Assembly (NCBI GenBank): GCA_977020255.1
Contig: CDROCS010000358.1
Coordinates: forward strand, 186,001-250,000
Direction of reading: 5' to 3'
Length of the DNA: 64,000 bases
Origin: Obrimoposthia wandeli
Lineage: Eukaryota
Under the pieces are notes generated by a model, which saw only the letters and a program-made list of their open reading frames with translations, did no database searches and was not told the DNA's origin. Positions 4,661-26,129 of the stretch are shown in pieces (within the stretch, counting starts at the first letter, position 1; each line of letters starts with the position of its first letter). A program made the position numbers and the translations under genes.

Positions 4661-5099
4661 CTAAATCTCAGTGTGCATGCAAATGTAAAATTTGCTGTAA
4701 GTCAAAAAAATAAAAGGATTCATAATAATTGTTTTCGTTACTTAGTCAATCAGTAAAAATAAAAGTTTACAATATAAAATAGTGTTATTTTCCAGAAACA
4801 AATAATCTTTTAACTACGAGAATTATATCATTATTTGATATTACCAATATTACTATTTTTATAGTCGTCATTTTTTTTCTTTTGTTTTTTTAGTATAATT
4901 TGATTATTATTATTCAATTTACGGCCTTTTATTTACTAATTACTTCATGTGAGTACTTTTTTAAATTTTATATATGTAATCACATTTTTTAGTTGTTATT
5001 CAAGTTTATTAGTATCCTTCAATTATTTTTTACATTTATAAGGTTATTTTTATTAAATGCATTCTTTTTTTATTAGGTTTCACTCAGTTTTTTTTTGTT

Positions 5100-8000
5100 T
5101 TTTTTCTCTTTCATTAGATGAATTTATGACACTTGGTATTATGCATGTCATTATTGCAACCTGAGGGTTAGTAAAGTTTACGCAAATGGATTGATTTTTT
5201 TGTTATATTTTGTTTTAGCGTTTTAATTTTTATTGTTGATCATATGAAAATGATAGATATTTCAATCAAATTTGCTATCATTATGAGTTCAGCTTGATAT
5301 TTTTTTATGATATGTTTTCTAAATATTTTTGTTGGCTATAATATGTTATATTTTATAAATTGGTAAAAATTTTTAGATTTTTTTTTAAAATTAATTGGTA
5401 CTGTATGTTTTTTTAGTGGTGAGTGGTCAATTATTCTTAGGTATTTTTGTTGTGTATTATGACGTTTATATTTCGATTTTTGTTGTAGTTTCTAGTAAGT
5501 ATTCTTCTATTTTTGTTATTGAGCAAATTCCACACTAAATAGTAAGTTTAAATATTCTCGATTTATAATAATTCTTAGGTTTTCTAGAGTGATTATATTT
5601 TACAAGTATCCAGTATGTGTCCACACAATCTACAAACCATTAGTTTACTTGTAATTATACATTTTCCAAATTGTATTATTTTATTTCGTTGTTTTAAGAA
5701 TTTCCTTGTTAAATTATGAATTGTTTGTGATTTTTCTATGTATTTTTTTGTAATTTTTTTATACACCATTTTTTTATATACAATTTGGTTTCCTTTATAT
5801 TTCTCTTATGATTTTTTTGTCGAAATCGTCTTTATTAGTTAAATTTTCCTTTTTATCATTATTTGCGTTGTGTTTATATGTTTTGCTGTTTCTAAAATTG
5901 TATCTAGATATTTGTGAGTTTTTATATTTCTTTGGTAATGTGTATTATTTTGTAAATGCAATCTGATTTTTTTTGTATAATGTTTATCCACAGATATTTT
6001 CTGTTTCAGTATTTTATCTTTATGAGTTTAGTATAGTTAACATTTGTAATACAGTGTTTATTTTACATTTGATCTCAAAATGTATTTGTGGTTTTTTACA
6101 GTTGAGTTTTCTTCAAGTACTTGCTGATATAAATTTATGTGTACTCTTATTTCTTTTAGTTTTAGGTTATTTTCAAGTTTGGCTGTTATATTGGTTCCGT
6201 TATTACTAATTATTGTATATTGACAATTGTATAGCATATCTAATTTGTGAGATTAAATGAATGTAATTTGTGAGTTGTGATTCATTATTTTACTTCCAAA
6301 TTTTATTTCTGACGATCAAGTTGGTCTGTTGTAATATTATTTATAGTTTTTTTTAATATTTTTTATAAATAACTTAGCTTTTTTAAATGATAGTTTTAGT
6401 CTTTTTCTAACTTATTTTTATGTTTTGGTATTTCTATATACTGTGTTGTGGGTTGAATTAATGTGAGATTAATATACATGTAAGGATCTCTATGGAACAT
6501 AAGGTAGAATGGTGTTTCTCCAGTAGTAAAAGCATCTTTAAAATTTAAATATTTAACTATTAGTACTCTTTTCTATAGTTTAGGTTTTACTATTGAGTTG
6601 TGACTATGATGTTCACAATATGTTATGAATATCTCTATGTTAATAATAAGTGATACGGATTATTATTTCGATTGGGATTTATTGTAAATCAAAAATATCT
6701 AAAACATACGATGATTTGTCACAAATATGATTGTTGTTATTATGTCCAGCTTTTGTTGTATTTATAGTCCAGGTGAGAGTGGGCAGCAACCAGAGATAGA
6801 GAGATTGCAGAGAGGGAAACCGAACGGGAAGAACGGCAGAGCGAGAAGTGTTCCGCAACAGATGAAAGACTGGTCCGTAAGTGAAGGGCAGCCAGTCAGT
6901 TCTGCTGTCTGTGTTAGTAGTCGTCGCCGATGCAGGGGGCAAGGACGACCGATAAAAACTGGTAGGGGAATAATCCCGGATTTGATGATGTAGCTGTCTG
7001 TAAGAGCAACCTTGGGAAGGACCGAGACAGCCTGATCTGTAAGGCTATTTCACTGATCTGATTAAACTTGTTTCGATCGCAGAGCGAACTGAATCAAGTT
7101 AGTCCAGTCGACCTGCGATCGAATCTCAAACAGTGACATTTATCTATCACTTTTATCTCCGGGAACTGACAAAATAAATTTTAAAAAATGTGCACCGAAT
7201 TAATTAAACTTAACATCTATGCGTACTCTACAATCAAAATCTTCTGCATAAATAAAATCTGTTTCTTGGTTTACTTGATATAATTTTGTATTTTTAATTT
7301 TTACCATTTTTAGATCAGCCTCTGTGCATTGATGCAAATCTAATAAAGAATTTTTTTAATATTTTGGGCAGTCATATACTTCTAGAGTATTAATTGGATT
7401 TATCATGTTCATAAATATACATATTGTTAATATTATCTGTATAATTCTCCACAAACTCTGTATAATTTTGTTGAAATTATTTGTATTTTTACAAATTTTT
7501 GATTTTGACTTTTTGGTGTTTTTCGTTTTACTTGTATTTTGATTTCTTTTCTTGTATTTGAGCAGTTTGGTATGTTTTTTTTATTGTTTATTTATTTTTT
7601 TGTAATGTTAGACAACCATCTCTAAATATATCTTCAAATTCGAATTGTAAGTTTGTTTTATCTGTATGTGGTTAATTATTATGGTATTGATGATGTATTT
7701 CTCTGTAGCAAATATCCATTTCTTTAAGTTTTTATTTTTAATAACGCAAGCTCGTCTGTGTTTGGAGTTGTTTCTGCATTTTCAATAGTGTATATAGGGT
7801 TTCTGGGAGTATATTGTTGATCTTTAGTATTGAATTGTACTGCTTTTTGAATTTTTGGTTGCTGTTTTATTGCTGTGTTTCCAAATTGATTCATCATTGT
7901 GTTTGATTTCCACAGTCATCGGTGTTGTGATTTTTCATATTACATATCTTACAAAATTTTGTATTTGTATCTATTTTAATTATTGTAATTATTATTTGAT

Positions 8001-9110
8001 TTATTGTAATTATTATTCCTTGGTAGTGTATTATTACTTTGTCTATTCATTTTTTTCTACAAGTTTTGATTGTATGATTTTGGAGTCCACAATTCATGCA
8101 TTTTCGAAAAGATCTTTGTTTAAATTGTGAGTTTTTAAAATTTCTATTTGACTGATCTCTATAAAAATTATTAGTTGGTGGTCTAAATTGTTGAAGATTT
8201 TGAAAATTATATTGGGTTAAAATTCTGAGTTTGGTTGTAGTTTGGTGGTGTTTGTGGTCGTTATATTTTTTCAAAAGATAGTGCTGAAATCTCGGTTTGC
8301 TATAACATATTTAGTATTGCTTCTACTAGCTGAGCTTTTCCTATAGCTTGTTGAAAGTTTTCCACTTCTAGTAATCCCGGGTGATCTCTGATTTTATTAT
8401 TTAAACCATATAAGAACTGATTTAAAAATAATCATTCTCTTTGTGCTTCCTCAATTTTTGAAAATGATTATGAAGCTAATCGTCGCCATTCGTCTGCAAA
8501 AATGTTTGTGGGTTCTCCTATATGTTGTTCACGTTGTCTGAATTGATTTACATACATTTGTTCTGATTGTACTCCTAAATGTTCCCATGTGTCTTTTTGT
8601 TGCTCAGTTAATCCTCTATAAATAGTTAAGGCAGTACTCTTTAGATATGCCAGGAAAACTCTAAGTTTTTCTGGGTTTGTCCATTCAAATGCCTGAGCAA
8701 ATGAATCGTATATATTCAAGAATTCGGGCAAAGAAGATTTATTGCCATTAAAAGCGTCTAGTGGTACATTCAGTCTATGACCTGCCATCTGAAGTACTTC
8801 GTTTATTTGTTCGTTATTTATTTCTATGTTATGTGTTCTGGTAGTGCCACTGTTTCTGTTGTATCTGAAGAGTTGTCTGAGTCAGACGTTTGTGGTAATG
8901 ATAACTTTCTGTATCAAAAGTTAATGTTAGGTTTATGTCTGATTATTGTTTCAAATGTTTCGATTGTAAGAATGTTTGTTAAACTTGCTGAATCGCTATA
9001 AAATGTTTTATATTTGTTTTGAGAAAGTGATGGAGTTCAGGGAAAAAATCGTTTTGCTTATTTATTTTGTTAAATTAATATATGCAAATTTCTTGTTTCT
9101 TTGTGTTTTA
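5100..9110 (-). pseudogene. Degenerate, internally deleted copy of the Gag-glycoprotein-Pol Gypsy family
   Basis: Minus strand is collinear with 12240-20870. It shows gag (8468-8788, MAGHRLNVPLDAFNG), the signal peptide and LEVYDC glycoprotein start (about 7185-7480), the integrase C-terminus (about 6000-6520) and the post-integrase region; many stops and frameshifts. Confidence 0.85.
6717..7138. mobile_element. Candidate solo LTR of a different family, nested in the degenerate copy
   Basis: Termini TGTCAC...GTGACA, 422 bp, GC-richer than its flanks, minus-strand TATA-like ctataaatac; no matching TSD seen. Confidence 0.5.
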
Positions 9111-9252: not shown

Positions 9253-9283
<31 letters not shown>

Positions 9284-10253
9284 CTATACCTACCAAACTC
9301 ACTCTGTAGGCCTCCATATGAGAAACCTAAAGATATTTTTAAGAAAATCCCACCAAAAATAAATTCTATGGAACGTAGCCTAGATCTCATAAATACTTGA
9401 TAAATTCCATAGAATATATTTTACTTGGCTCTATACACTGCAAGAAATATAGAACGTCTTAATTCATTTCGTACTAAAGAATGTAAACTCTATTATAAGA
9501 TAATGTATAGTGAAATATAGTTTACTCATATATTTTTCATCGAAATCGTTCTGCAATATAACAATAAATTCTTCAAATGGCAACAAATACGTGAAGATAT
9601 AAAAATAACTTAAAATATGAGGACGTCATATATCGAATTTGAACAACGTTTAATTGGCATAGTGCTAAATTCAATTTTTAAAAATTTTATATTCAAAAAA
9701 AACTTTTTTCAAAAATTTCTCTGTGCAAAATATCATCTGCAATATAACTTATTTTAATGCAATAAATTACAAATGAATGTATTCTTGATATAAAATTTAT
9801 AATATATAAACATTAAATTCAATAAATTATTTATATGCAATTGTTTTAATCTTCCTCTTATAAATAATATATTTAAAATCCTTTAAATATATTTAATACA
9901 ATTGTCCGATTTAGTCTAATAAATAGTCACGATTGATTTTAAATTATAAAATCAAATTTGTGCTACAAAATATATGATTTTAATTGTAAACTATCGACGA
10001 ATACTCTAACCGTGTTATATTCAAAAAAATTAAATTAATTTTTTTGATATTGACTAAATGTTTATTTTAAAAGTTTTTTTTAATATTTCTAAACCACATT
10101 AATAAAATAATTAGTATCGTCTTTATAGTCTTTAAAAGAGTTTTCAATTTTTAAAATAAATAAATTTGTTAATGGAATTTTGTGCCATACAAATATTAAG
10201 TTTTGTACCACTGCTTAATATATTCATATTTTGTGCTTATATATTGTAATCCA
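9253..10253. repeat. Dispersed non-autonomous element with (CTAA)7 at one end, copy 1
   Basis: Highly similar to 31630-32453; both copies end at gtaatccac. Confidence 0.8.
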
Positions 10254-10525
10254 CAATTATAGCGCCCTTAATGGGTCTTACTTTTACCGTGCGATAAAGT
10301 TGTGTGTATGTCGATTTTATTTTCATGGAAATCTACACTTTTGCACTCGGTGCATTTCTATTTTGCATTACTGTGTTCGTTGGGCAATTTTATTATTCGG
10401 TCTAAATGGGATTCTAAAATCAACGGTTGAATTAAAACGGTGTTGTGCCATCCATCACAAATTGCCCTAGACTTGCTAATCGATGTTTTGTATTGCGTGA
10501 TTTTGCATTGATGTTATTTTTACCT

Positions 10526-12574: not shown

Positions 12575-14060
12575 ATGGCTGAACATAAATTAAATGTTCC
12601 TTTAGACGCTTTCAATGGCGATAAATCCTCATTACCCGAATTTTTAAATAGATTTGATTCATTTGCTCAAGCATTTGAATGGACTAATGAAGAGAAACTT
12701 AGGGTTTTTCCAGCGTATTTAAAAGGCACTGCCTTAACAATTTATAGAGGATTAAACAATGAACAAAAAGACACATGGGACCATTTAGTTCAGAATTTTC
12801 AAAATATGATTTTAGGAACCCAATCAGAGCAAAATTACTTAAATCAGTTTAGACAACGTGAGCAACATTTAGGAGAACCCACAAATATTTTTGCAATTGA
12901 ATTAAGACGTTTAGCCCTAAAATCATTCCCTGGAATTGAGGAAGTTTTAAGAGAGCGCTTACTGTTACATCAGTTTCTACATGGATTAAATAATAAAATC
13001 AAAAATCATCCAGCTCTACTAGAAGTAGAAAATTTTCAGCAAGCTGTAAATAAGGCTCAACTTGTAGAAACAAGATTAAACATGTTACAACAATCTGAGG
13101 TTTCAGCATTAACCTTTGAAAAAATACAAAGACCAACAACACCACCAAATTTCAATCAAACTCAAAACTATAACCCAAATACACAATCTAATTACCAAAG
13201 CCAACAACAATATACACCACCGACAAATAACTTTTATAGAAATCAAACAAACAGAAACTATACAGACTCACAAATTACACAAAGACCTTTCCAGAAATGT
13301 ACAAATTGTGGACTACAAAATCACACAATAGAGAATTGTTATAAAATAACCAACAACAAATTTTGTAGATTTTGTAAAAAAGACAATCATACTATTGAAA
13401 CTTGCCGAAAACTGTTATACAGACAAAGTAATAATATACAACCACAAAATAATAACTTTAACAATCCTAATAATAATTTCAAAAATACAAATAATAATTT
13501 TAGAAGCCCATATAATAATTTCAATAATCAAAATAATCAAGCTAAATATTTTAATACTAATACAAAATTTTGTAAAATTTGTAATATGAAAAATCACAAT
13601 ACTGATGAATGTAGCAAACTAAATACAATGATGAACCAATTTGGTAACACAACAATAAAACAACAACAACAACCACAACCACAGATTCAAAAAACAGTAC
13701 AGTTTAACAATCAAAATCAACAATATGCTTACAGAAACCCAATACATACTATTGAAAACACTGATATAAATCAGGAAACAGAAGAAGTTGCATTGATGAG
13801 ATTAAGACAACAAGAAATAGATAATCGCTATAAAGAAACACATCAGCAATACCAAAACAATGAGCAAAACACAAATAGTACCAACTCTCAATCTGAATTC
13901 GGAGAAATATTTAGAAACGGTTGTCTAACATTAGAAAAAAGAACACAAATAAGTACAAAAATAAATCAAACCACTCAAACACAAGATAAAAAATCGAAAA
14001 ATAAAAATAAACGAAAATCACCAAAAAATAGTAAAAATTCAAATCTTAAAAATACATATA
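12575..14060 (+). CDS. gag: Gag: capsid domain plus three CCHC zinc knuckles and Asn/Gln-rich linkers
   Basis: AFNGD..LPEFLNRF..AQAFEW..EKL, FRQREQ; knuckles CTNCGLQNHTIENC, CRFCKKDNHTIETC, CKICNMKNHNTDEC. Confidence 0.9.
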
Positions 14061-14068
14061 ATTTTAAC

Positions 14069-15950
14069 AAAATCATCCAGAATTTATGGAAAATAATTCA
14101 AATAATATTTATGATATGTATAATTACAAATATAATAAAACCTATAAATGCTCTTGAAGCATATGATTGTTCAAAATATAGTATTCAAAATAAATATTCA
14201 CTAATGGATTTACAACAATGCGCCGACGCAGATCCAAATGAAGTAAAAGTTAAAACCACCAAGTTATTTCATGTATACCAGGAAACAGATTACATAAATA
14301 CAGAAGTTTTCGAATGTAGAGTACATGTGGAAACATTCATAACATATTGCGGACAACACAGCCATAATTCAATTGTTAAGCCAGCATTAGGAAAAACACC
14401 AATAATTGTGGACGCGTTAAATTGTAAAGATGCTTTTGCAACAGGCGAACTGAGAATAGATAGAGAAATAAAAGTAAAAGCAATAAAAAACAAAATAATA
14501 CAACAAATGATTACGGTGGTAGGAACTATCAAATCTGACGGAGAATGCACAACAGGATCATACGTCGTAATGGGAGTTAAACAAAGTGGTTTAGTAGTTA
14601 TAAAAAACTTTGAGGTAGAACTAAGAACATTTAAAGCAACATTTGATCCATCTACAAATACCATGGTGACTATGCCTTTTTGTGCAGCAAATATCGGATA
14701 TTGTAACACAGGATCTTCAATTTTATACTATAAGGTAAAAACAGACCAATGTAAATTAATACTACTAAAATCAGAAAATTTCCAAATAATTCAAGGTCAA
14801 AGATTCAAAGATGATCCAGAGCTAGATCAACGAATTCCAAAAAATATACTTAAAAATATAGAACTAGAAAAATACAAAAAACATCAACTCCAACTATTTT
14901 AATGTCAACTGAACAAGGTTCAGGTATGCGATTTATTAAAAGAAAGAGGAATCCCGATGTGGACACTCTATTTATACAACTAATTATAAAGGAATATATC
15001 TAAGTAAAGAAAAAATTTATAATGCAAAAACTACACCAACAAAATTTGATATAAAAAATTACGATTATTTCAATAATAAATTAGATAATTTTTATCACAA
15101 AGGATTAATGACAATAGAAGCTATTTATAGAGAAACAATAATGAATGACTGTAAATTAAATCAAGAAATTTTGAAAACAAAACTAGCAATTATTGCTACA
15201 AATCCAGAATTAATAACACCATTATTACCGTTACCAGATGGTACTTTCGGAAGAGTAATGGGAGAGGTACTATATACGTATCAATGCCAAAAAGTAATAG
15301 TTAATATAAGAAATCACAATAAATGTACCAAAGAATTGCCAATTTCATACAAAAATCATTCATTATTTGTAGAACCAATCACCAGAATAATACTTTTTAA
15401 CACATTCAGCATAAAAGAAATAAACTGTTCAAACATAATGGCACCTCATTATAAAATTTCAAAAGATATCTGGATAACATTACCAAGAAGAGACATAGTT
15501 GCTCAACCACTAAAACTACAATTAACTAATCTAAAAAATGACATAGAAATAAATCCAGACAATGAACTAAATACAAAAGGCATTTACATACAAGAAGATA
15601 TAGATAAATTAAGAAAAGAAATTTTATTTCCTCAAATAAGATCACGAATTTTAACACAAATCATAGAAAGATCAGTACCAGACGGAATTAGCCGTCCTGA
15701 TTATGATTTATTACTTTCTCCAAACCATTACATAAAAGCTACAAAAAATACAATGTCAAAAATATGGGGAAAATTTTTAATATTTGGACAAGCATTTTCT
15801 GGACTTGTAGGAATATATGCACTACAAATATGCTTTAAAATACTATTGAGTCAAATTTTATCCACATACTATATTTATAAAGTTGGAGGATTAACATGGA
15901 AACTAATATTAGGATGTTTTCCATTTTTGGAAAAATTTCTTATATTTAAT
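14069..15950 (+). pseudogene. env: Chuvirus-like (class III) envelope glycoprotein in frame with Gag; two frameshifts near 14880 and 14940
   Basis: Internal signal peptide, then LEAYDC...QC, ECRVH...YCGQHSHNS, CGHSIYTTN, NDCKLNQEIL, GRVMGEVLYTYQC, and a C-terminal hydrophobic region WGKFLIFGQAFSGLVGIY; pattern recalled for chuviral G. Confidence 0.8.
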
Positions 15951-16139
15951 CATCTTCAAAATACTGTAAACGCATTATCAAACGAAATGCGAGAAACAAA
16001 TTTACAAAAAATAGTAGACAATAAAAATAAAGAGAATACAGAATCTGCACAATACCCCGATTTAGAAAGATATAAAGAAGAAATAATAGTTCAAAAATCA
16101 ACTGCACCAACAATATATACTATAAATCAAATGGATAAT

Positions 16140-16793
16140 GATAGACGACCTTATGTAAAAGTTGAAATAAATGAGTATAAATTAAAAGCTTTAATTGACA
16201 CAGGATCAAGCGTAACAGTTTTGGACGAGTCTTTCTTAAAACCACACCAAATATTACTACTTCTCACAGATAATAGTCAAATAACAGCAGCAAACGGTCA
16301 ACCCGTAAATATTATTGGTAAATTAGATTGTATTTTTAAAATAGGAGATAAATTTATAAAAATACCTACTAGAATAATGAAAAATTGTCCATGTCAGATG
16401 ATAATAGGAATAGATACATTGAGGAAATTAGGAAACAATTTTCACTTCGACTTTGAGAAAAATCAAATTAAAGACATTTACAGACCAAACGCTAAAAGCG
16501 AATACGAATTGGAAATAAAAGGAGATATCATCCTTCAACCTAGAACAGAAACAATATTACAATTAGAAACTAACATAGTTACAGAAAAAGACATCTTATT
16601 CGAACCTTATAAATATCAACAGGAAACATTAAATTACGTTCTACCAAATATAATTTGTAAAATAAGAAATAACACAATACCTATCAGAATACTAAATGGA
16701 GACATAAACGAGATTCATCTAAAAGTAGGAACACGCCTTGGAAAAATAAGTGTTATAGAGAATATAGAATTAATTAATAATGAAAAAATATAA
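16140..16793 (+). CDS. Aspartic protease and post-protease domain, in the same ORF (15108-16793) as the glycoprotein C-terminus
   Basis: RPYVKVEI...ALIDTGSSVTVL (DTG at 16197), IIGID; one in-frame TAA at 16791-16793 separates it from RT. Confidence 0.9.
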   Translation, partial: DRRPYVKVEINEYKLKALIDTGSSVTVLDESFLKPHQILLLLTDNSQITAANGQPVNIIGKLDCIFKIGDKFIKIPTRIMKNCPCQMIIGIDTLRKLGNNFHFDFEKNQIKDIYRPNAKSEYELEIKGDIILQPRTETILQLETNIVTEKDILFEPYKYQQETLNYVLPNIICKIRNNTIPIRILNGDINEIHLKVGTRLGKISVIENIELINNEKI

Positions 16794-18200
16794 GACAATT
16801 CCACCGTAAAATTTGAAAATATTAGATTAAATGATTATGAGAAATCAAAACTAAAATCATTGATGGAGAAATATGACGTGATTTTTTGCAAAAATGAATA
16901 TGACCTAGGACGAACAGATTTAATTAAACATAACCTTCCGTTAACTATTAATACAGCAATCAAACAACGACCTTACCGTATCCCATACGCTTACAGAGAA
17001 GAAGCTCAAAGACAGGTAAAAGGAATGTTAGAGAATAATATCATAAGAAGAAGTTTTTCAGCATGGACATCTCCGGTTGTTTTGATAAAAAGAAAGATGG
17101 TTCACTAAGATTTTGCGTAGATTACAGAAAATTAAACGAGATCACACATAAAGACACATATCCGCTTCCAAGAATCGATGAAATCTTAGATAAACTAAAA
17201 AATGCAAAAATATTTACAACCTTAGATTTACAAAGTGGATATTGGCAGATAGAAATAGATGAATCAGATAAAGAAAAACAGCATTCTCAACAGGAGAAGG
17301 ATTATACGAATTTAACGTTTTACCTTTTGGATTAACAGGTGCTCCAGCAACATTTCAGAGGTGCATGAGCCACATTTTAATGGACGCCGATCATGTCATG
17401 GTTTATATCGACAATATTCTAATTTTTTCAAAAAATTTTGAAGAACATTTAAAAGATTTAGAAAATGTATTTCTTAGATTAAAAATAGCAGGTTTAAAAT
17501 TAAAACCAAAAAAGTGTGAATGGATGAAAGACAAAGTGAATTATCTAGGTCACGCAGTATCAGCAAAAGGAATTCAACCAGATGAAAGTAATATAGAAAA
17601 AATAAAGAATTTTCCAATTCCAAAAACAGTAAAAAATATACAAGAATTTTTAGGACTTGCAGGATATTATCGTCGATTTATCAGAAACTTTGCACAAATA
17701 GCAACACCATTAAACAAACTTATTAAAAAGGATGAAAATTTTGAATGGGAAACGGAACAACAAGAGTCATACGAGTACTTAAAACAAAAATTGATAGAAA
17801 AACCTATATTGATATATCCTAATTTCAACAACTCGTTTCTAGTAATGACTGACGCAAGTGGATACGCGTTAGGAGCAGTACTAGGACAACAGGATAATAA
17901 TGAAAAAGATCATGTGATAGCGTACGCAAGCAGAGGTCTTAAAAACACGAAATAAATATTCAAACAAAAGAAAGGAATGCCCCCGCTATTTGTTTCGCAA
18001 TGGAACATTTTAAACATTACTTATTAGGTCGAAAAGTTCACGTTTATACTGATCAAAGACCATTACAGTGGCTACTAAATCATAAAGATACAACATCTAG
18101 ATTAATGAGATGGGCGTTAATTCTCCAAAAATATGATATTGAAATTAAATATAGAAAAGGTAAATCAAACGCCAATGCAGATTGCCTATCTAGAATAAGA
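16794..18200 (+). pseudogene. pol: Reverse transcriptase and RNase H, frameshifted
   Basis: [47 protein letters not shown] in place of YxDD (17404-17415), TDASGYALGAVL, ANADCLSR. Confidence 0.92.
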
Positions 18201-18479
18201 GAAGAAGTAAATGTAATAAATTCCAATGACACCGAATTAAATATTTTTACAATAATCAAGGCTCGATATGATGATAAAGTAATCACCGATCTTCAAAGCA
18301 AAGATACGGAATTACAACAAATAATTAAGTATATCACCATCAATCAAGTTCCAACAGATGAAAAATTAAGAAAACATTTAAAAAAAACTCATGAATCTCG
18401 CTATAAATTCAGTAACAATATTTTACATTATTTAAACGATAAAAATCTGTACTCACTAGTTATACCTAAAGAAATACAA

Positions 18480-19560
18480 TGACAATTACTCCTTCAATAT
18501 CATAACGGAGCTTTAGGAGGACATCTTTCAACAAAAAAGACACATTCAAGATTAAATTTAAAATATTATTGGATTGATATGAAAGAAGATGTAAAAAATT
18601 GGTGTAATACTTGTGAAATATGTCTTAAAAGAAAAAACACCTTACGTACCACAAAGATACCTTTAAAACCAATACCGTATCCATCGGCCCCCATGGAAAC
18701 TGTTGCCATGGATGTAATGGGGCCATTACCTGAAACACCCCGAGGAAATCGATATATAATAGTATTTTCAGATTATTTTACAAGATGGCCAGAGGCTTTT
18801 CCAACACATGATCATAAGGCTGAAACCATCGCGAAGGTTTTAGTCGAAAAAATTATTTTTACTTTCGGTGCACCCCGAAAGTTATTAACCGACAAAGGTC
18901 CTGAATTTATAAATAATGTATTAGCATCAATAGCTGAAATCTTTCACATAAAAAAGATCAATACAACACCATATCACCCTCAAACCGACGGATTAGTAGA
19001 AAGATTTAATAGAATTCTCGAAGATATGATGGCATCATATACAAACAACAACCAAACAGATTGGGATTTGCACATACCCCCATGCCTTTTTGCATATAGA
19101 ACATCAGTACATGCATCTACAGGAGAAACACCTTTTTACCTTATGTTCCTCAGAGATCCGCAAATGCCTATTGACCTAACATTACTACAACCTACTACAC
19201 AATACCTAGAAATACCTGAATACAAAATAGAAATTAGAGAAAGAATAAAACTAGCATTTGAAAAGGCTAAATTATTTGTAAAAAACATACAAGAAAATTA
19301 CAAAGAATATTATGATAGAAGAACTAAGCCATCAAATATAAAAAGCGGAAGTAAAGTGATGATTCACAATCCACAAATTAATGTAGGATTGTCACACAAA
19401 TTATCAAAACCATACAAAGGACCATATACAGTTATTAGTACCAATGGAACTAACATAACAGCTAAACTCGACAATGAACTAAAATCAAAAGAAATAAGAA
19501 CACACATAAATAGATGTCGACAAGTACCAGAAGAGAATACAACAGTAAAAAGCCATAAAT
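18480..19560 (+). pseudogene. Integrase (HHCC zinc finger, DDE core, GPY motif)
   Basis: H..ALGGH...WCNTCEIC; AMDVMGP, LTDKGPEF, GLVERFN; KPYKGPY; a stop lies immediately upstream. Confidence 0.92.
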
Positions 19561-19619
19561 ATAATTTGAGATCAAACACAAAAAATACAGTTTTACAAAT
19601 GTTACCAATACAAGATATA

Positions 19620-20930
19620 CAGAGAAAAAATATTAAAAACAAAAAATCTAAATGGAATAAGGCAATAGTTATATCAATAAAGGAATTTTCAAAAATTTTA
19701 ATAATATTCGCAATTTATCTCTTCATAAGTAAAAACGTGCAAGGAGCAAATGCTACCAAACTAAATGATAAAAAACTAACTATAAAAAATGTTATAAATA
19801 AACATGACTCGACAACACATCTTATAAAAAATTTTGGTTTAATTACGATAATACCAGAAATCACATCTATAAAGTTAAAAATCTCGCTCTTTATAAACAA
19901 AACTGAAATATACAAATTACACAAAAGACAGAAAACAAAACATAACAATAATAGGAATAAAATCACGAAAATATACAATACCATTCTTAAGAGATGAAAC
20001 ACAATATGAAATTAAAATAAAATCAAATACACAAAACATTACACTTTATCAAAGAACTATAGAAACTCACATATACCTAGCATCAATATTAGAAACAACA
20101 GCGAAATATATATCAAAACATAAAATAATGATAAAATGGGAATTTCAACTAAAAATAGACGACTTAGATAAAGCCCTCATTAGAATTAGATATAGAGGAC
20201 ATAATATTAATTTTTGGAAAAACTCAGAAAAACAATTAGAAAAAACACAAACTAAAACAAATTTAACCATAGAAAATATAAGATATCCAGAGAGAATAAT
20301 AATACAATATAGAGAATGTGTAATCACAAATAAACCAATGATGTATAGAAGTTGGGGACACATTTTGAATACTTACAAAAACATAACTACTTTAGAAACA
20401 ATAGGAAAAAAGATATCAAAAATGTTTCAACCAACTCTTTTTGCGGGAGTTGGCTAATAATAAAAATAAAAGAACCTATATTAAAATCAACAAAAGTAAT
20501 GAAAATATATTTAACACAATATACAACAAAAATATTTAAGAAAATATCATCAATCATTTCTAAAGAAAACATACAAAACCAGTCAACCTTTTTAAAAAAT
20601 ACAATAAATTCATCAAAATCGATGAACTTAAAACATATAATATTTTTTAGTCAACGAAATCATTCACAAAACATATATCATACAGAATTTAAGATAATAA
20701 TAGCAATAATAATTGAAATATTTAACATTTTAATAAAAGTAATAATAAAAATAAAAACTTTTAAAAGAATTAAAACTAAAAAATCATTTCACTTAAACAA
20801 ACTGTATGGACCACCAGGTCCACTCATAACATCCCTAATACCAAGTGGTACAAATTCATCCAATACATCAATAGATACGGTAATCAAGAACTATAAACAC
20901 AAAGAGAAAAACAACACTGATTTGTAAAAA
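19620..20930 (+). pseudogene. Post-integrase region beginning with a second signal-peptide-like segment; fragmented
   Basis: Basic stretch then KILIIFAIYLFISKNVQG in frame with integrase; homologous sequence in the minus-strand copy at 5100-5950. Confidence 0.45.
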
Positions 20931-20997: not shown

Positions 20998-21306
20998 ATG
21001 AGAAATTCAAAATTAGTACAAAATAATAGAAGAAGATATAAAAGACAGAAAAAATGGGAAAATAAATTGTTAATAGAGAATATAAATCTGAGATCGCATT
21101 TAAAAGACAAGGAAATGGAATGTGAACGAATGAATAATGCTTTTGACGTTGCAATTGAAAGATTAGAACATAGCCAAACAAATCAGGAATTATTAGTACG
21201 ACGACTCAGAGAAGCATTAAACTCTCTCGTATCATTGAGATCAGTAATTAATCGTTTGATGGGATTTCAACCGGGAGAAAGCGATGATTCCGGGTGTGAA
21301 AATTAG
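20998..21306 (+). CDS. 102-aa basic plus coiled-coil (bZIP-like) accessory protein
   Basis: NNRRRYKRQKKW followed by heptad-spaced Leu; ATG preceded by a tttag acceptor-like site. Confidence 0.55.
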   Translation: MRNSKLVQNNRRRYKRQKKWENKLLIENINLRSHLKDKEMECERMNNAFDVAIERLEHSQTNQELLVRRLREALNSLVSLRSVINRLMGFQPGESDDSGCEN

Positions 21307-21739
21307 TAAAATCCCCAGTGAGTAAAATAAAATATAAAATAAAAGAAAATTGAGAATGAGTTTGGGCTTTTGGCATGTTTTTGGAGAGGAAATGCGTTTA
21401 TGAATGGGTATTAATATTCATTAACTTTAGTTGAAATAGTAATAATAAAATTAAGAATAGGTAAAAAATGAATATACCAGTATAGATATGTATATATTGA
21501 TATTGATAACACCAGTAATAAGAATATATATATTAAAAAATGAAAAAATCATATTTTATTTATATACCTTGTTTGTTTAAACTTGTTATATAAAGACAAA
21601 AACGATTTACAGATTTTTGATTAACAAAAAGAGACAAAATAACTAACAGGAACATTTCATTTGATAGACAGTTGACAATTTTTATATTTGCATGTAAAAG
21701 ATCAACAATTTTTTTTTACTATATCTGTATACCCTACAG

Positions 21740-22876
21740 ATGGAACCCACAAGCACGAATCCTCATTTGAACTGGCAGGTGGTGCCGCGGGGAAAGAGAG
21801 AGAAGTCGGTCCAGTTAGCAGAACAACGTCCAGAAATGGCGAAAATGGCTAAGTTCCTTTATGGAAAAATAAGACAGTTTGGAACAAGGTATTTCCATAA
21901 CCATTACGGAATAAAGCTTTTTGACAATCAGACCCAGCTTCCAAATAGCATTAAGTTAAGAGACACCCCAAGACAAAGTATAATTCTCAACATAAATAGT
22001 AAAAAGCCAACGGAAAAAAGACTGTTTGAGTTGATGAATTTCTTACCAATATGCACGGACATTGAGATTCACGTAGCAAAAGGCCGTGGATTTTTAAAAC
22101 ACAGGAAAAGCAAACATTTTTCTATCCTTCTCCTGCAAAACCACTCTTACAGATTAATGAGACATCAAATAACTCCCGATTTGATGATTCGTTTTTCGGG
22201 TGGAAATAACATATTTTTCATGGAGCAAAATGTGCGACCTAATCCCGTTCAAGTCTGCCATTTGAATATCATACCCTACAATCCTCAAATATTTTTTGTC
22301 GATTGTGAAATGGTAGTAAAAATGAACAAACAACCCACCCTAGCTAGCATTACAATAATGAATAGAAGCGGACAGATCGTGTTGGATACGAAATGCAATA
22401 GCAGAGACAGAATCAGGAATTATGTGACAAGAATAACGGGCCTTAATGAACGGAAGTTAAGAAACCAACCTGATTCTGTCGAAGTGTTAGAACGTGTCCA
22501 ATCCTTGCTAAGAGACAATATTTTCGTAGGGACGGGAATATCCAACGATCTCAAAGTTTTAGGATTACAAAAAAACGATTTTTCGCACACGGTTGATCTA
22601 GGGGCAACACAAACTATTCAAATGGAAATGAACCGTAGAGAACAAGCCGGACTTGCTCGAATGGTTTCGTGGTATTTCAATAAAGAAATACAAAAGAATA
22701 CCCACTCTAGCCTCATAGACACGCAATGGACCCGAAAAATTTTCCTCCATAAAGAACAAGAACTGCTAAAAGAATGTGGTTTGACCGTCTCTTTTCCCCG
22801 CGTAACCAACGCTAATTTTCCTGTCTTAACCGAGGTTATAGACCTCACCTCCTCTGATTCTGAGGACAACATTTAA
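21740..22876 (+). CDS. DEDDh 3'-5' exonuclease (REX4/ISG20-like), 378 aa
   Basis: ExoI FVDCEMV, NYVTRITGL, ExoII FVGTGISNDLKVL, ExoIII HSSLIDT; uninterrupted ORF. Confidence 0.88.
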   Translation: MEPTSTNPHLNWQVVPRGKREKSVQLAEQRPEMAKMAKFLYGKIRQFGTRYFHNHYGIKLFDNQTQLPNSIKLRDTPRQSIILNINSKKPTEKRLFELMNFLPICTDIEIHVAKGRGFLKHRKSKHFSILLLQNHSYRLMRHQITPDLMIRFSGGNNIFFMEQNVRPNPVQVCHLNIIPYNPQIFFVDCEMVVKMNKQPTLASITIMNRSGQIVLDTKCNSRDRIRNYVTRITGLNERKLRNQPDSVEVLERVQSLLRDNIFVGTGISNDLKVLGLQKNDFSHTVDLGATQTIQMEMNRREQAGLARMVSWYFNKEIQKNTHSSLIDTQWTRKIFLHKEQELLKECGLTVSFPRVTNANFPVLTEVIDLTSSDSEDNI

Positions 22877-23254
22877 AGTGGTAGGAAAATTTATGATTTT
22901 AGAAAATGTTTCGAGAAAAATCAGAGTGAACAGAAAATAAAAAAAAGTAAACACTACTAGAGTAATCGTGTTTATGGCTGATTTTTATCGAAAACATAAA
23001 AATAATTTTATAGCATGAATGAATCCATATTTTAAATGATGACAATTTTTTTTAACTATGTTTAACAATGATTATTTTAACAATTAAACAAACATCTTTG
23101 TTAAATATAAAACGTCAGAGGTCTGACTTTGTATACTCCCATAGGATTGTTGGGTCTTTAATTAAAATTAATTAATTAAATTACAGTCAATTTAAATTGA
23201 CATTTTTTAAAATTATCTAAAGTGCCCACAATTAGGGAGGTTTATCAAATTTCA

Positions 23255-23306
23255 GCCTCCGACGGGTTGTTAGCCCGTTTCGCCCTGCCGGGCTCATCAG
23301 GAAGGC
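23255..23306 (-). ncRNA. Type I hammerhead ribozyme
   Basis: Minus strand: GCCUUC-CUGAUGA-GCCC(GGCA)GGGC-GAAA-CGGG(CUAACAA)CCCG-UC-GGAGGC. All core nucleotides and three helices present; GUC cleavage triplet. Confidence 0.9.
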
Positions 23307-23329
23307 GGCGAAAAAAGCGGTTGATAAAA

Positions 23330-24015: not shown

Positions 24016-24088
24016 AGTCCATCATACCATGCAATAAGACAGTGTTGAGATGACCAGCGATGTAGAGGATTGTAATATGTGGACTGTT

Positions 24089-24097
24089 AAGAGAAGG
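24089..24097 (+). promoter_or_regulatory. Polypurine tract
   Basis: aagagaagg 3 nt upstream of the 3' LTR start. Confidence 0.6.
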
Positions 24098-24100
24098 CTA

Positions 24101-24777
24101 TGTGTAAAGATCACGGATTATTAATGTTGCAGCTTCTTCCTTACACATGTGAATGTGATTGTGTGTTGATACTTCATACCTGGACCTGTGTGTCTGATTG
24201 GTCCCGGTCTGCCAACTTTATCAACTTTCTCTCCCTCAATGGACATCGTCGATTTAGATGCCCATTTGACATTTGGACGATTGCTATTTATAGCAATCGT
24301 CGATTGGATTTAGATCAGTCAATTCTCCTTATTACAAATTTGTTGTCTTTTCAGTTTTCATTATCACACAAATTATTTTATGAATATATTTCTAAAAGAA
24401 GAACAAATTATTTTATGATCTAAGAATACATTATTGGAAACTATTCAAATATAACATTCAGTTTTCATTATCACACAAATTAATTTATGAATATATTTCT
24501 AAAATAAGAACAAATTATTTTATGATCTAAGAATACATTATTGGAAACTATTCAAATATAACATTCAGTTTTCATTATCACACAAATTAATTTATGAATA
24601 TATTTCTAAAAGAAGAACAAATTATTTTATGATCTAAGAATACATTATTGGAAACTATTCAAATATAACATTCAGTTTTCATTATCACACAAATTATTTT
24701 ATGAATATATTTCTAAAAGAAGAACAAATTATTTTATGATCTAAGAATACATTATTGGAAACTAATCAAATATAACA
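24101..24777 (+). repeat. 3' LTR including a 4 x 107 bp tandem array (24350-24777)
   Basis: Starts tgtgt, shares gacctgtgtg..tgattggtcccggtct and the 26-bp palindrome with the 5' LTR, ends aaatataaca. Confidence 0.8.
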
Positions 24778-26129
24778 TATCTTCAGAAAAATGTCTAATA
24801 AAATTCACCAAAATTAAAAAGTCATTCTCAAAATATTTTTAATTTCAGACAGCCTTCTCTGATCGTCCTATTCCTAGTGCAATTTTCAATCAGCATTGAG
24901 AGAAATTTTTGGTTTCTGTAGCTGTCTCGTATGATTATTTACGATTGCTTGGATATTATTTTTTCTATGGTATTCTCTGCGTTAATTAATTGTTGTATTT
25001 ATCTTTATCCCAATTATTCTTTGGTAATGGTTTATCTTCTGTAACCATACCATGATAACTATTGATGACGATGTCTGGTCTTATGCTTTCTTTACTTTTT
25101 CTGATTTTCCTCTTAGGTTTTTCTCTAATGCATTTAAATTATATACTTATTGCAATGTTTCAAGGATACAAACAATTTACTCGAATTCAATTATTATTTT
25201 AATTTTCTCAAATTTTATTGTTTAAGGTTATTTATAGTAAGTACTTACTATATATGTTTTAACTTTTCTACATTATGAATTAATTAATTTCTGTATGAAC
25301 CGAAAAAATAAAAAATTATATAAAAATCGTAAATTGCTTTAATTAAATTTATAAATATAACACAACTTAAAATATACCAAAATTTAATGGATTTTGCTTT
25401 GGAATGCTATAATATATTGTCTTTTTCTATTTTCAATCAACGTATTTGTGCTAAAAAGAAGTTTTCTACTTTGACATACAGTAAAAGTAAAAGGTGAATT
25501 CGCCTGAAAGAATTATATAGACCAATGTGAATTTCGCTGAACACCTTGATTCTTAGCTATGATACTCTCATAAAGATTTGATAACAAAAAAGGAAATTGT
25601 TTGAAAAACCTTTAATTAGAATTTTTACATTCTGATTAAGTGATTAGTAGATATTCCGATTAGTGAATCCAATTGTTAACAAGAAAAGAAGACGTCGTCA
25701 ACGATATCTGGCCTCGCAACACAGTACAAAGTAAGCAGTATATAAACCATCGATTTAATTGATACCTTGTAGAATTTGATTCAGATTTAGAGACACAGAG
25801 ATAGACACCGCCTAGAATCGACAAGAAAATATACTAAACAGAAATTTCGAAAAGAGTTGAACTTATAAACATGTTGCATATAAACCTTGCCAAAAATATT
25901 GAGTACTGTACGCCTTCAAGAATAGGGGTATCAACAACTGTGAGTAATAATTTGATATCAATTGGTAAATTTAATATTTAATATACATTGACAATTGTAA
26001 ATTGAGATTCGATCACAGCTGCGTTACAAATAATACAGAAATTTTAATTTTTGGAAATAATGGAGATTGGATTATAGCTACTTCACAAAGGACACGGAAA
26101 TCAACAATTGTAAGTAATATTTTACAACA

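What the first reader, a model, noticed from the sequence alone, without database searches (positions are those of the whole stretch)
21740..22876. Intact DEDDh (REX4/ISG20-like) exonuclease carried between pol and the 3' LTR
Seen: an uninterrupted 378-aa ORF with D-x-E, D and H-x4-D motifs, although pol is broken. The ATG directly follows a polypyrimidine tract and CAG (ccctacagATG), like a spliced subgenomic mRNA acceptor. The N-terminal 200 aa were not recognised. Known: bdelloid rotifer LTR elements carry DEDDy exonuclease ORFs, arenavirus and coronavirus exonucleases degrade dsRNA or proofread, and ISG20 is antiviral. Inference: a captured nuclease that counters RNA silencing or sensing, or processes element RNA.
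Basis: partly seen in the sequence, partly recalled or inferred. Interest (0 to 1): 0.8.

Follow-up and report, generated by a model that had tools for sequence, protein, structure and literature searches.

The report
Retroelement-borne RNA exonuclease accessory gene
The open reading frame is a real, intact REX4/ISG20-type 3'-5' exonuclease. It is the standard last gene of a little-known lineage of very large, envelope-carrying gypsy-like retroelements, so here a mobile element carries its own RNA-trimming enzyme, whose role is still unknown.

Summary
The ORF at 21740-22876 (378 aa) is real. Its C-terminal half is a DEDDh exonuclease with all five catalytic residues, and the model matches ISG20 and ISG20L2 (TM 0.85-0.87). 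The unrecognised N-terminal half folds as a helix plus a cupin-like beta-barrel.

It follows a decayed gag / class III fusion glycoprotein / PR / RT / RH / IN element. Homologues follow the same kind of polyprotein, or precede gag, on five independent public contigs. Two of those show LTR pairs enclosing the gene.

The two-domain protein forms a separate clade of 28 cluster representatives (support 99), apart from cellular REX4-like proteins. Its catalytic residues are conserved, and its divergence pattern matches pol.

Seven of nine start codons sit just after a pyrimidine tract plus YAG (background 8.6%), which suggests a spliced mRNA.

No 3' LTR could be identified in the window. The ORF being intact while pol is broken is not informative (P about 0.34 by chance).

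The function is inferred only. I favour an accessory RNA exonuclease acting against RNA-based silencing, with RNA or cDNA end processing as the main rival. I found no description of this gene in the searchable literature. I rate it a new variant of a known kind.

The parts
12575..14902 (+). gag (Retrotrans_gag, CCHC knuckles) running in frame into a signal-like hydrophobic segment and the N-terminal part of a class III fusion glycoprotein (Pfam Monjiviricetes_fusion)
15108..16793 (+). C-terminal part of the fusion glycoprotein with its membrane anchor, continuing in frame into the aspartic protease. Separated from the previous piece by a break at 14902-15108.
16860..18482 (+). Reverse transcriptase and RNase H in four pieces in three frames. 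The RT catalytic box is not canonical in this copy.
18579..19997 (+). Integrase (H2C2, rve) running into a hydrophobic segment that starts a post-integrase tail
20128..20927 (+). Remainder of the post-integrase tail, broken into two frames, with a second hydrophobic segment. It corresponds to the intact tails of the relatives' polyproteins.
20998..21306 (+). orf102: a small ORF with a basic stretch and a coiled-coil-like part. It has its own pyrimidine tract plus TAG before the ATG. No counterpart in relatives and no Pfam match.
21318..21739 (+). Candidate intron. A GTGAGT donor lies 12 nt after the orf102 stop, and a T-rich tract plus CAG acceptor abuts the exonuclease ATG. Motif level only.
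21740..22876 (+). Exonuclease ORF, 378 aa, intact
21845..22255 (+). N-terminal domain (residues 36-172): a long helix plus a cupin-like beta-barrel. Found only in the retroelement clade.
22271..22783 (+). DEDDh exonuclease domain (residues 178-348). Catalytic codons: D188 at 22301-22303, E190 at 22307-22309, D270 at 22547-22549, H322 at 22703-22705, D327 at 22718-22720.
4676..8932 (-). Second, heavily deleted copy of a related element (70-75% nucleotide identity). It keeps gag, bits of env, integrase and tail. Colinear similarity fades about 45 nt before the point where the exonuclease would start, and no exonuclease is detectable.
9276..10254 (.). ~0.98-kb repeat, 88-96% identical to 31629-32453. 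The pair brackets the element, but each copy lies next to a minus-strand retroelement remnant. LTR status unresolved.
24183..24884 (.). Repeat shared with 10518-10929: about 100 bp at 90% identity, then unlike tandem repeats (107-bp units here, 46-bp units upstream). Not a convincing LTR.

Best explanation
The ORF is the 3'-terminal accessory gene of a deep lineage of very large, envelope-carrying Ty3/gypsy-type retroelements. Their layout is gag, class III fusion glycoprotein, PR, RT, RH, IN, a membrane tail, and then the exonuclease.

Shown: The protein has two domains, a helix plus cupin-like barrel that occurs only in this lineage, and a DEDDh exonuclease of the REX4/ISG20/ISG20L2/SDN/PAN2 type. 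The active site is conserved across the lineage.

Inferred:
- The exonuclease domain was taken once from a cellular REX4-like gene and has since diverged together with pol.
- It is translated from its own ATG on a spliced (or trans-spliced) subgenomic mRNA, using the acceptor that abuts the start codon.
- It trims RNA 3' ends in the producer cell.
- Its most likely job is to blunt RNA-guided silencing or RNA sensing of the element, by degrading small guide RNAs or their precursors.

The copy in this window sits in a dead element, so its intact ORF is probably a survivor by chance.

My confidence by step: element-borne gene 0.9; active 3'-5' exonuclease at family level 0.75; spliced expression 0.6; counter-silencing role 0.3-0.35.
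For: Linkage to the element:
- L002 has the integrase C-terminus and tail, then 33 nt, then the homologue P0002.
- L004 has a 4057-aa polyprotein (fusion glycoprotein, Ank, PR, RT, RH, IN), then 100 nt, then P0009.
- L005 has a 2640-aa polyprotein followed by P0010.
- L006 has P0008, then 2.1 kb, then gag.
- L010 has an LTR pair at 2-396 and 15964-16355 enclosing the polyprotein and the exonuclease.
- L009 has an LTR pair at 4280-4927 and 24432-25080 (97.8% identical) enclosing gag, the polyprotein and the exonuclease.
- The window's gag, env and pol are homologous to those of L009 along their whole length.

A separate family:
- A clade of 28 cluster representatives is split from 121 other DEDDh proteins with SH-aLRT 99.
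- An HMM of the N-terminal domain hits only clade members.

Likely active:
- Catalytic residues are kept as D 26/28, E 26/28, D or E 27/28, H 27/28 and D 27/28.
- The model has pLDDT 82 and pTM 0.78, with TM 0.85-0.87 to ISG20 and ISG20L2.

Co-divergence with pol:
- Exonuclease and pol-core identities group the contigs the same way: 38%/70% and 38%/75% within pairs, about 30%/53% between pairs.

Splicing:
- A YAG lies within 15 nt of the ATG in 8 of 9 members.
- A pyrimidine-rich tract precedes it in 7 of 9, against 8.6% of background ATGs (binomial about 1e-6).

Accessory, host-facing role:
- The gene is a separate ORF outside the polyprotein. In retroviruses, replication enzymes sit in pol, while spliced 3' ORFs are regulators or counter-defence factors (established knowledge; Cer1 CERV in PMC10309623).
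- The exonuclease evolves about twice as fast as pol.
- The nearest solved relatives all act on RNA 3' ends, and SDN1 degrades small RNAs.
Against: - There are no expression, splice-junction or biochemical data.
- The substrate is unknown. ISG20-type enzymes also cut single-stranded DNA.
- The second copy in the window shows no exonuclease, though it is badly deleted.
- No LTR pair was found in the window, so the element's 3' boundary here is undefined.
- The window's exonuclease is about 11 GC points richer than its polyprotein, unlike in relatives. This leaves open a recombinant 3' part or host selection.
- Faster evolution of the exonuclease could be relaxed constraint rather than an arms race.
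- The acceptor test used thresholds chosen after looking at the data.
Confidence: 0.55

Rival explanations
1. The exonuclease serves replication. It might process the tRNA primer or genomic RNA 3' ends, trim cDNA ends, or act in trans as a proofreader for reverse transcriptase. Proofreading would help these unusually long elements (15 to over 20 kb) keep their coding capacity, much as the DEDDh ExoN does for nidoviruses.
For: - The elements are very large: a 4057-aa polyprotein in L004, about 16.4 kb from LTR to LTR in L010, and at least 20.8 kb in L009.
- The gene is present in every relative for which context was found, and it diverges together with pol.
- DEDDh enzymes include proofreaders, and the fold search also hits Pol III epsilon and TREX2.
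Against: - The gene is a separate ORF and not part of the polyprotein, so it has no obvious route into the particle.
- Its closest relatives by sequence and fold are RNA exonucleases, not DNA proofreaders.
- It evolves much faster than pol, which is unusual for a core replication enzyme.
- No comparison with lineage members lacking the gene could be made.
Confidence: 0.25
2. In this locus the exonuclease has been taken over by the host. The element is dead, but the ORF is kept by selection and expressed as a host gene.
For: - The ORF is intact with all catalytic residues, while the rest of the element is in at least 9 pieces.
- Its GC content is 0.39 against 0.28 for the polyprotein, a gap not seen in relatives.
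- Donor-like and acceptor-like signals and an octamer-like motif lie just upstream.
Against: - The ORF would be intact by chance about 34% of the time, given at least 8 breaks in 8353 nt.
- The GC-richer stretch continues past the ORF into non-coding DNA up to about 24100, so it is not specific to the coding sequence.
- No orthologous locus or second allele was available to measure selection.
Confidence: 0.1
3. The domain is a catalytically silent RNA-binding module, as in Maelstrom or EXD1, or a passenger with no function.
For: - Some clade members have substitutions. In nine rows the ExoII residue is E rather than D, and P0048 is degenerate.
- Activity has not been measured.
Against: - All five catalytic positions are kept in nearly all members at about 20-40% overall identity.
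- The gene keeps its position across sublineages whose pol cores differ by about 47%.
Confidence: 0.07
4. The ORF is an ordinary host REX4/ISG20-like gene or exon that merely lies next to a retroelement.
For: - No LTR encloses it in the window.
- The best named cellular relatives are cestode 'RNA exonuclease 4' proteins.
Against: - The same position relative to the element recurs on five independent contigs, two with enclosing LTRs.
- It falls in a separate clade with a lineage-specific N-terminal domain.
- It has no exact or close match in the protein collections.
Confidence: 0.03

Closest known systems
DEDDy exonuclease ORF3 of bdelloid rotifer Juno and Vesta LTR retrotransposons and Athena/Terminon elements (Rodriguez, Kenefick and Arkhipova 2017, PMC5408684)
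   Same: An extra ORF after pol in an LTR retroelement encodes a DnaQ-superfamily 3'-5' exonuclease with intact catalytic residues. Its role is unknown, and RNA 3'-end processing or interference with silencing has been suggested.
   Different: - The rotifer ORFs are the RNase D/WRN/Rrp6-like DEDDy branch. This one is the DEDDh REX4/ISG20 branch (H-x4-D).
- The host element lineage is different (gag-env-pol with a class III fusogen).
- This protein has an added cupin-like N-terminal domain.
- It is therefore an independent acquisition.
GAG-ENV-POL 'errantivirus-like' Ty3/gypsy elements of Nematoda, Bryozoa and Platyhelminthes (eLife 2026, PMC13524379; Sacco et al. 2022, J Gen Virol 103:1739, not readable here)
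   Same: They are Ty3/gypsy elements with a class III (gB-like or G-like) fusion glycoprotein placed between gag and pol. That is the layout of the window element and of L004, L005, L009 and L010.
   Different: - The eLife paper does not mention any nuclease (0 occurrences of 'exonuclease' or 'nuclease').
- It stopped its element models at POL.
- Here a further conserved gene follows POL.
Cellular REX4 / ISG20 / ISG20L2 / REXO / SDN / PAN2 exonucleases (Pfam PF00929)
   Same: Same fold and the same five catalytic residues. The best sequence and structure matches fall in this group.
   Different: - It forms a separate, well-supported clade.
- It carries a cupin-like N-terminal domain that the 121 other hits lack.
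- It is encoded by a retroelement.
CERV of the C. elegans Cer1 retrotransposon (PMC10309623)
   Same: [quoted passage not shown] It is expressed from a spliced mRNA using host-type splice sites retained in the genomic RNA.
   Different: - CERV is a non-enzymatic nuclear protein needed for genomic RNA export. No sequence comparison with CERV was run here.
- CERV borrows gag exons, whereas the exonuclease has its own ATG right after the acceptor.
Viral DEDDh exonucleases: nidovirus nsp14 ExoN and arenavirus NP exonuclease (from established knowledge)
   Same: A DEDDh 3'-5' exonuclease encoded by an RNA-templated replicator. It serves proofreading of very long genomes (nsp14) or destruction of immunostimulatory RNA (NP).
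   Different: - They are domains of larger replicase or nucleoprotein chains of RNA viruses.
- They did not appear among the top 50 matches in the viral fold library, which were giant-virus and phage exonucleases.

Membership tests
DEDDh (DnaQ-like) exonucleases, RNase_T / REX4-ISG20 group (PF00929) | ExoI motif D-x-E | tested here: met
   D188 and E190 lie in the DCEMV stretch. They are invariant in the 22-sequence alignment.
DEDDh (DnaQ-like) exonucleases, RNase_T / REX4-ISG20 group (PF00929) | ExoII acidic residue | tested here: met
   D270 aligns with the ISG20 ExoII Asp. The clade has D or E at this position in 27 of 28 rows.
DEDDh (DnaQ-like) exonucleases, RNase_T / REX4-ISG20 group (PF00929) | ExoIII motif H-x4-D (the 'h' type rather than Y-x3-D) | tested here: met
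   H322 and D327 are present, and each is kept in 27 of 28 clade rows.
DEDDh (DnaQ-like) exonucleases, RNase_T / REX4-ISG20 group (PF00929) | Profile match above the curated threshold, and the RNase H-like exonuclease fold | tested here: met
   PF00929 scores 40.8 bits against a cut-off of 24. Foldseek gives TM (target-normalised) 0.85 to ISG20 and 0.86-0.87 to ISG20L2.
DEDDh (DnaQ-like) exonucleases, RNase_T / REX4-ISG20 group (PF00929) | Metal-dependent 3'-5' exonuclease activity | not testable with these tools
   This needs the purified protein and a catalytic mutant.
Orthologue of cellular REX4 or ISG20 | Groups inside the cellular REX4/ISG20 clade and shares its domain layout | tested here: not met
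   It is split from the 121 other hits with SH-aLRT 99. It has an N-terminal domain found only in the retroelement clade. Only a few of the 121 carry names (cestode REX4 and fungal proteins).
Env-carrying Ty3/gypsy (Metaviridae) element of the GAG-ENV-POL type | gag with CCHC knuckles, PR-RT-RH-IN order, gypsy-type RNase H | tested here: met
   Retrotrans_gag, RVP and gag-asp_proteas, RVT_1, RT_RNaseH and RT_RNaseH_2, Integrase_H2C2 and rve all match, in that order.
Env-carrying Ty3/gypsy (Metaviridae) element of the GAG-ENV-POL type | Class III fusion glycoprotein between gag and protease | tested here: met
   PF24664 Monjiviricetes_fusion matches at E=3e-29 and 1e-55 in the two pieces. The relatives have the same layout.
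Env-carrying Ty3/gypsy (Metaviridae) element of the GAG-ENV-POL type | Long terminal repeats enclosing the coding region, including the exonuclease | tested here: inconclusive
   No convincing pair was found in the window. The feature is met in relatives L009 (97.8% identical, starting TGTGAG) and L010 (89.8% identical).
Env-carrying Ty3/gypsy (Metaviridae) element of the GAG-ENV-POL type | Primer binding site and polypurine tract next to the LTRs | not tested
   The LTR ends are undefined in the window. The 3' LTR of L009 and the 5' LTR of L010 are cut by the contig ends. I noted only PBS-like strings by eye.
Rotifer-type DEDDy ORF3 | Y-x3-D ExoIII motif and RNase D/WRN-like domain | tested here: not met
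   The motif is H-x4-D. Pfam assigns the window ORF to RNase_T, not to the RNase D-type 3'-5' exonuclease family. One relative, P0002, has a weak sub-threshold DNA_pol_A_exo1 hit.
Spliced 3' accessory gene of a retroelement (as Cer1 CERV or retroviral accessory genes) | [quoted passage not shown] | tested here: met
Spliced 3' accessory gene of a retroelement (as Cer1 CERV or retroviral accessory genes) | Expressed from a spliced subgenomic mRNA | not testable with these tools
   Only motif-level support exists. Acceptor-like signals are enriched before the ATG, and GTRAGT donors occur in the leaders of L009 and L010 but not above chance.

The most novel reading that the evidence does not exclude
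The exonuclease is either of two things. It could be the first transposon-encoded suppressor of animal small-RNA (piRNA/siRNA) silencing, acting as a small-RNA-degrading nuclease. Or it could be a trans-acting proofreader that lets these retroelements reach 15 to over 20 kb, a retroelement parallel to nidovirus ExoN. In either case a whole lineage of envelope-bearing retroelements, possibly still infectious, depends on a captured host RNA exonuclease joined to a new cupin-like targeting domain.
Probability: 0.2. Interest if true: 0.9.

Novelty: new variant of a known kind. Interest (0 to 1): 0.62.

Why it matters
Extra enzymatic ORFs in LTR retroelements are rare, and none has a proven role. 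This study shows four things:
- A REX4/ISG20-type RNA exonuclease with a lineage-specific N-terminal domain is a fixed gene of a deep, poorly described lineage of giant gag-env-pol elements in animals.
- The gene diverges together with pol.
- It keeps its active site.
- It probably has its own spliced mRNA.

This makes two open questions directly testable with a soluble 40-kDa enzyme. One is whether transposons encode active countermeasures against RNA-guided silencing. The other is how retroelements several times the usual length cope with error-prone replication. It also means that published models of these elements, which stop at pol, miss a gene.

Tried and rejected
- **LTR search in the window.** I used the repeat finder and blastn at word sizes 11, 9 and 7. 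This gave only the 9276-10254 / 31629-32453 pair and the 10518-10929 / 24183-24884 pair. The first pair has no TG..CA ends and no target duplication. Each copy also adjoins a minus-strand remnant. The second pair shares about 100 bp and then unlike tandem repeats. The lenient searches gave only ~60% AT-rich noise. I reject both pairs as demonstrated LTRs of this element.
- **Word-indexed protein searches.** The single protein found nothing. The profiles found only P0004 and three proteins. The exhaustive HMMER search was what found the family.
- **Exact look-up and viral contigs.** The exact look-up of the window protein found no record. The viral-contig scan found nothing.
- **Run accessions.** A literature search for the run accessions of L001, L002 and P0004 found nothing, so the hosts of those contigs are unknown.
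- **Sacco et al. 2022** could not be read.
- **P0072.** This is the window protein's nearest tree neighbour, but it sits on a very long branch, lacks the N-terminal domain and lies among tightly packed small ORFs. I treat its placement as an artefact and do not count it as a family member.
- **Second exonuclease copy.** A six-frame HMM search of the whole window found none.
- **3' regions.** The regions downstream of the exonuclease share nothing between the window and the relatives.
- **dN/dS.** This was not possible. There is no close copy, and the relatives are saturated at about 30% amino-acid identity.
- **Donor sites.** GTRAGT strings in the leaders are no commoner than chance.
Full report
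**1. The observation**

An uninterrupted ORF of 378 codons runs from 21740 to 22876 on the + strand. The frame opens only 14 codons upstream, and the ATG at 21740 is its first.

Pfam RNase_T (PF00929) matches residues 186-335 at E=4e-10, which is 40.8 bits against a cut-off of 24. A sequence search of solved structures returns ISG20 (E=3e-5), Arabidopsis SDN1, ISG20L2 and PAN2.

The catalytic residues are D188 and E190 (ExoI), D270 (ExoII), and H322 and D327 (ExoIII, the H-x4-D that defines the DEDDh type). I checked their codons in the DNA. The ATG abuts a T-rich tract ending in CAG.

**2. The surroundings**

Upstream lies a gypsy-type retroelement on the same strand.
- gag, with CCHC knuckles, starts at 12575.
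- It runs in frame into a hydrophobic signal-like segment and a class III fusion glycoprotein (Pfam Monjiviricetes_fusion, E=3e-29 and 1e-55 in two pieces).
- The membrane anchor of the glycoprotein runs in frame into the protease.
- RT, gypsy-type RNase H and integrase follow.
- After integrase comes a tail with two hydrophobic segments, ending at 20927.

This coding region is in at least nine pieces in three frames. The RT catalytic box is canonical in four relatives but not in this copy. So 'pol is broken' is correct.

With at least 8 breaks in 8353 nt, a 1137-nt stretch stays unbroken with probability exp(-1.09), about 0.34. The element also still holds unbroken ORFs of 775, 561 and 472 codons. 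The intactness of the exonuclease ORF is therefore not evidence of selection.

Between the tail and the exonuclease lie 812 nt. They hold a 102-codon ORF (20998-21306) with its own pyrimidine tract plus TAG before the ATG. A GTGAGT lies 12 nt after its stop.

**3. The LTR question**

Two repeat pairs bracket the element.

The first pair is 10518-10929 and 24183-24884. It shares about 100 bp at 90% identity, followed by unlike tandem repeats.

The second pair is 9276-10254 and 31629-32453, at 88-96% identity and 22.3 kb apart. It lacks TG..CA ends and a target duplication. Each copy lies directly beside a minus-strand retroelement remnant. One is the second copy, whose gag starts at 8788. The other is an RT/RH fragment at 31429-30915. 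More lenient searches gave only AT-rich noise.

The 3' boundary of the element in this window is therefore undefined.

**4. Does the nuclease belong to the element?**

The window alone cannot say. A second, related copy lies on the minus strand at 8932-5113, with 70-75% nucleotide identity and a weak colinear match down to 4676. It has lost most of env, all of PR, RT and RH, and part of IN. It shows no exonuclease by tblastn or by a six-frame profile search. It is too degraded to be decisive.

The answer came from outside the window. An exhaustive HMMER search of 1.84 billion representatives found 1236 DEDDh proteins. Only two aligned over nearly the full length: P0001 and P0002, at 31-33% identity. 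P0004 shares the N-terminal region as well. A metagenome contig added a fifth member, L003.

A tree of 149 exonuclease domains puts the window protein in a clade of 28 representatives, split from the other 121 with SH-aLRT 99. A profile of the N-terminal region (residues 36-172) hits clade members only. One clade row, P0072, is a long-branch artefact with an unrelated context, and I discount it.

Genomic contexts could be fetched for eight members of the clade (not counting P0072).
- **L002:** integrase C-terminus and membrane tail (33% identical to window 19326-19709), then 33 nt, then the exonuclease.
- **L004:** one 4057-codon ORF with fusion glycoprotein, ankyrin repeats, PR, RT, RH and IN, then 100 nt, then the exonuclease.
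- **L005:** a 2640-codon polyprotein, then the exonuclease.
- **L006:** the exonuclease, then 2.1 kb, then gag.
- **L007/L010:** a direct repeat at 2-396 and 15964-16355 (89.8% identical) encloses the polyprotein and the exonuclease. A Polinton-type polymerase gene follows.
- **L008/L009:** a direct repeat starting TGTGAG at 4280-4927 and 24432-25080 (97.8% identical) encloses gag, the polyprotein and the exonuclease. A further 6.5 kb lies before the 3' repeat.
- **L001, L003 and the P0004 contig:** too short or without DNA, so uninformative.

The window's gag, env, PR, RT, RH and IN align with the L009 proteins along their whole length, at up to 66% identity in RT.

Identities of the exonuclease and of the pol core sort the contigs the same way.

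| Comparison | Exonuclease | pol core |
|---|---|---|
| L004 vs L009 | 38% | 70% |
| L005 vs L010 | 38% | 75% |
| Between the two pairs | about 30% | about 53% |
| Window vs the four relatives | 26-30% | about 41-63% (by piece) |

The gene is therefore a fixed component of this element lineage, inherited along with pol, and evolving roughly twice as fast.

**5. The protein**

With a 22-sequence alignment, AlphaFold2 gives mean pLDDT 82 and pTM 0.78.
- Residues 181-348 superpose on ISG20 and ISG20L2, with target-normalised TM 0.85-0.87 and rmsd 2.2-3.2 Å. Matches to PAN2 and SDN1 follow (the same ranking came from the first, weaker model).
- Residues 31-166 form a long helix followed by a beta-barrel. 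It matches cupin-fold proteins: cupin-2 protein 3d82 at TM 0.63-0.64, and the sigma-1 receptor barrel.
- The barrel shows no canonical cupin metal-binding motifs, so it is more likely a binding module. The positions nearly invariant across the clade are Y41, P68, H111 and G115.
- The viral structure library returned giant-virus and phage exonucleases and cupins. No arenavirus or coronavirus ExoN appeared in the top 50.

Across the 28-row clade, at 20-40% identity, the catalytic positions are kept as follows: D 26/28, E 26/28, D or E 27/28, H 27/28 and D 27/28. The exceptions are truncated or degenerate rows. This argues for an active enzyme at family level.

**6. Expression**

In eight of nine members a YAG lies within 15 nt upstream of the ATG. 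In seven of nine it is preceded by at least 9 pyrimidines in 15. The same test is passed by 8.6% of all ATGs in the same sequences, giving a binomial P of about 1e-6. I chose the thresholds after looking at the data.

At about 30% protein identity, the flanking non-coding DNA is not conserved by descent. So the recurrence points to a functional 3' splice site, used in cis or in trans.

GTRAGT donors occur in the leaders of L009 and L010, and just after orf102 in the window, but no more often than chance.

There is a precedent. [quoted passage not shown]

**7. Mechanism**

Shown:
- The gene is element-borne.
- It has a DEDDh fold and motifs.
- Its active site is conserved.
- It has a lineage-specific second domain.
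- It has an acceptor-like signal before the ATG.

Inferred:
- It is a 3'-5' exonuclease acting on RNA, because all its nearest relatives are RNA exonucleases.
- It acts in the producer cell rather than in the particle. It is a separate ORF, and retroviral replication enzymes are normally part of pol, while 3' spliced ORFs are regulators or counter-defence factors.

Given this, and its fast evolution, I favour a role against RNA-guided silencing or RNA sensing. That could mean small-RNA degradation in the manner of SDN1, or removal of double-stranded or aberrant element RNA. I put this at about 0.3-0.35.

The main rival, at about 0.25, is a replication role: primer or genome 3'-end processing, or trans proofreading. 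The size of these elements makes this attractive: a polyprotein of up to 4057 codons and 16 to over 20 kb from LTR to LTR.

Minor rivals are host take-over of this particular copy, a catalytically silent binding module, and a chance neighbour. The last is effectively excluded.

**8. Comparison with what is known**

Rotifer Juno and Vesta elements carry DEDDy exonuclease ORF3s (PMC5408684). That is a different branch of the superfamily in a different element lineage.

GAG-ENV-POL elements with class III fusogens have been described in nematodes, bryozoans and flatworms (PMC13524379; Sacco 2022). The readable paper does not mention a nuclease, and it ends its element models at POL. Searches for DEDDh or exonuclease together with LTR-retrotransposon or errantivirus terms found nothing relevant. 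Sacco 2022 could not be read, so prior mention there cannot be excluded.

I file the finding as a new variant of a known kind: an accessory nuclease ORF in an LTR retroelement.

**9. Unexplained**

The window's exonuclease ORF has GC 0.39 against 0.28 for its polyprotein. In the relatives the two differ by 0-3 points. The GC-richer stretch continues to about 24100. orf102 has no counterpart elsewhere. The host of the window was not identified.

**10. Verdict**

Its main structural interpretation is right and can be generalised to a whole lineage. Two details, the 3' LTR and the meaning of the ORF's intactness, do not hold. The function remains open.

Noticed in passing
window 12575-20927; L004, L005, L009, L010: gag, the fusion glycoprotein, PR, RT, RH, IN and a tail lie in one frame with no stop between env and protease. 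Relatives have single ORFs of 2640 to 4057 codons, and L004 carries ankyrin repeats between env and PR. A membrane glycoprotein embedded in a Gag-Pol-type polyprotein raises questions of topology and processing.
   Followed up: partly
window 19650-20927; L002 350-1567; C-terminal ~500-600 residues of the L005, L009 and L010 polyproteins: After integrase, every relative has a tail with two hydrophobic segments (signal-like and anchor-like) and no Pfam match. It may be a second membrane protein. In the window it is broken into three frames.
   Followed up: partly
window 20998-21306: orf102 has an arginine/lysine-rich stretch followed by a coiled-coil-like part, a pyrimidine tract plus TAG before its ATG, and a GTGAGT 12 nt after its stop. 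It has no homologue in the relatives or elsewhere in the window. It could be a small regulatory accessory protein or a chance ORF.
   Followed up: partly
window 21740-24100 versus 12575-20927: There is a compositional step. The exonuclease ORF has GC 0.39 and A 0.36, while the polyprotein region has GC 0.28 and A 0.46. The step is not seen in the relatives and continues into the non-coding DNA downstream.
   Followed up: partly
window 4676-8932 (- strand): A second, heavily deleted copy of a related element lies head-to-head with the first. An inverted-repeat pair at 4110-4195 and 4547-4632 sits just beyond the point where similarity ends.
   Followed up: partly
window 30915-31429 (- strand): A short RT/RH fragment of a more distant retroelement (29-45% identity to the L009 polyprotein) lies directly beside the repeat at 31629-32453.
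   Followed up: no
window 24243-24884 and 10694-10862: Tandem arrays of 107-bp units (about six copies, up to 99% identical) and of 46-bp units. Both follow a shared ~100-bp sequence that contains a palindrome.
   Followed up: partly
window 27270-28355 and 33155-34303: Two paralogous single-exon ORFs encode RING plus TRAF-type zinc finger plus coiled-coil proteins. One lies on each side of the repeat at 31629-32453.
   Followed up: partly
window ~44500-55000: A virus-like or Polinton-like block. It has an 822-codon ORF with a DTDS polymerase-type motif and no Pfam hit (46381-48849). It also has a poxvirus A32-like packaging ATPase (53536-54183, -), an integrase-like stretch (52401-52769, -), a TBP-domain ORF (54486-54869, -) and a 354-codon ORF of unknown type (49804-50868, -). 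A relative's contig (L010) also has a Polinton-type polymerase next to the retroelement.
   Followed up: partly
L009 17883-24431: In this relative, 6.5 kb separate the exonuclease from the 3' LTR. The stretch holds ORFs with prolyl 4-hydroxylase N-terminal (P4Ha_N) matches. It could be extra cargo, a nested insertion, or host DNA caught between LTRs of two elements.
   Followed up: no
L011 and L012 (context of P0072): The window protein's nearest tree neighbour lacks the N-terminal domain, lies among tightly packed small ORFs and has a very long branch. It is probably not part of the retroelement family.
   Followed up: partly
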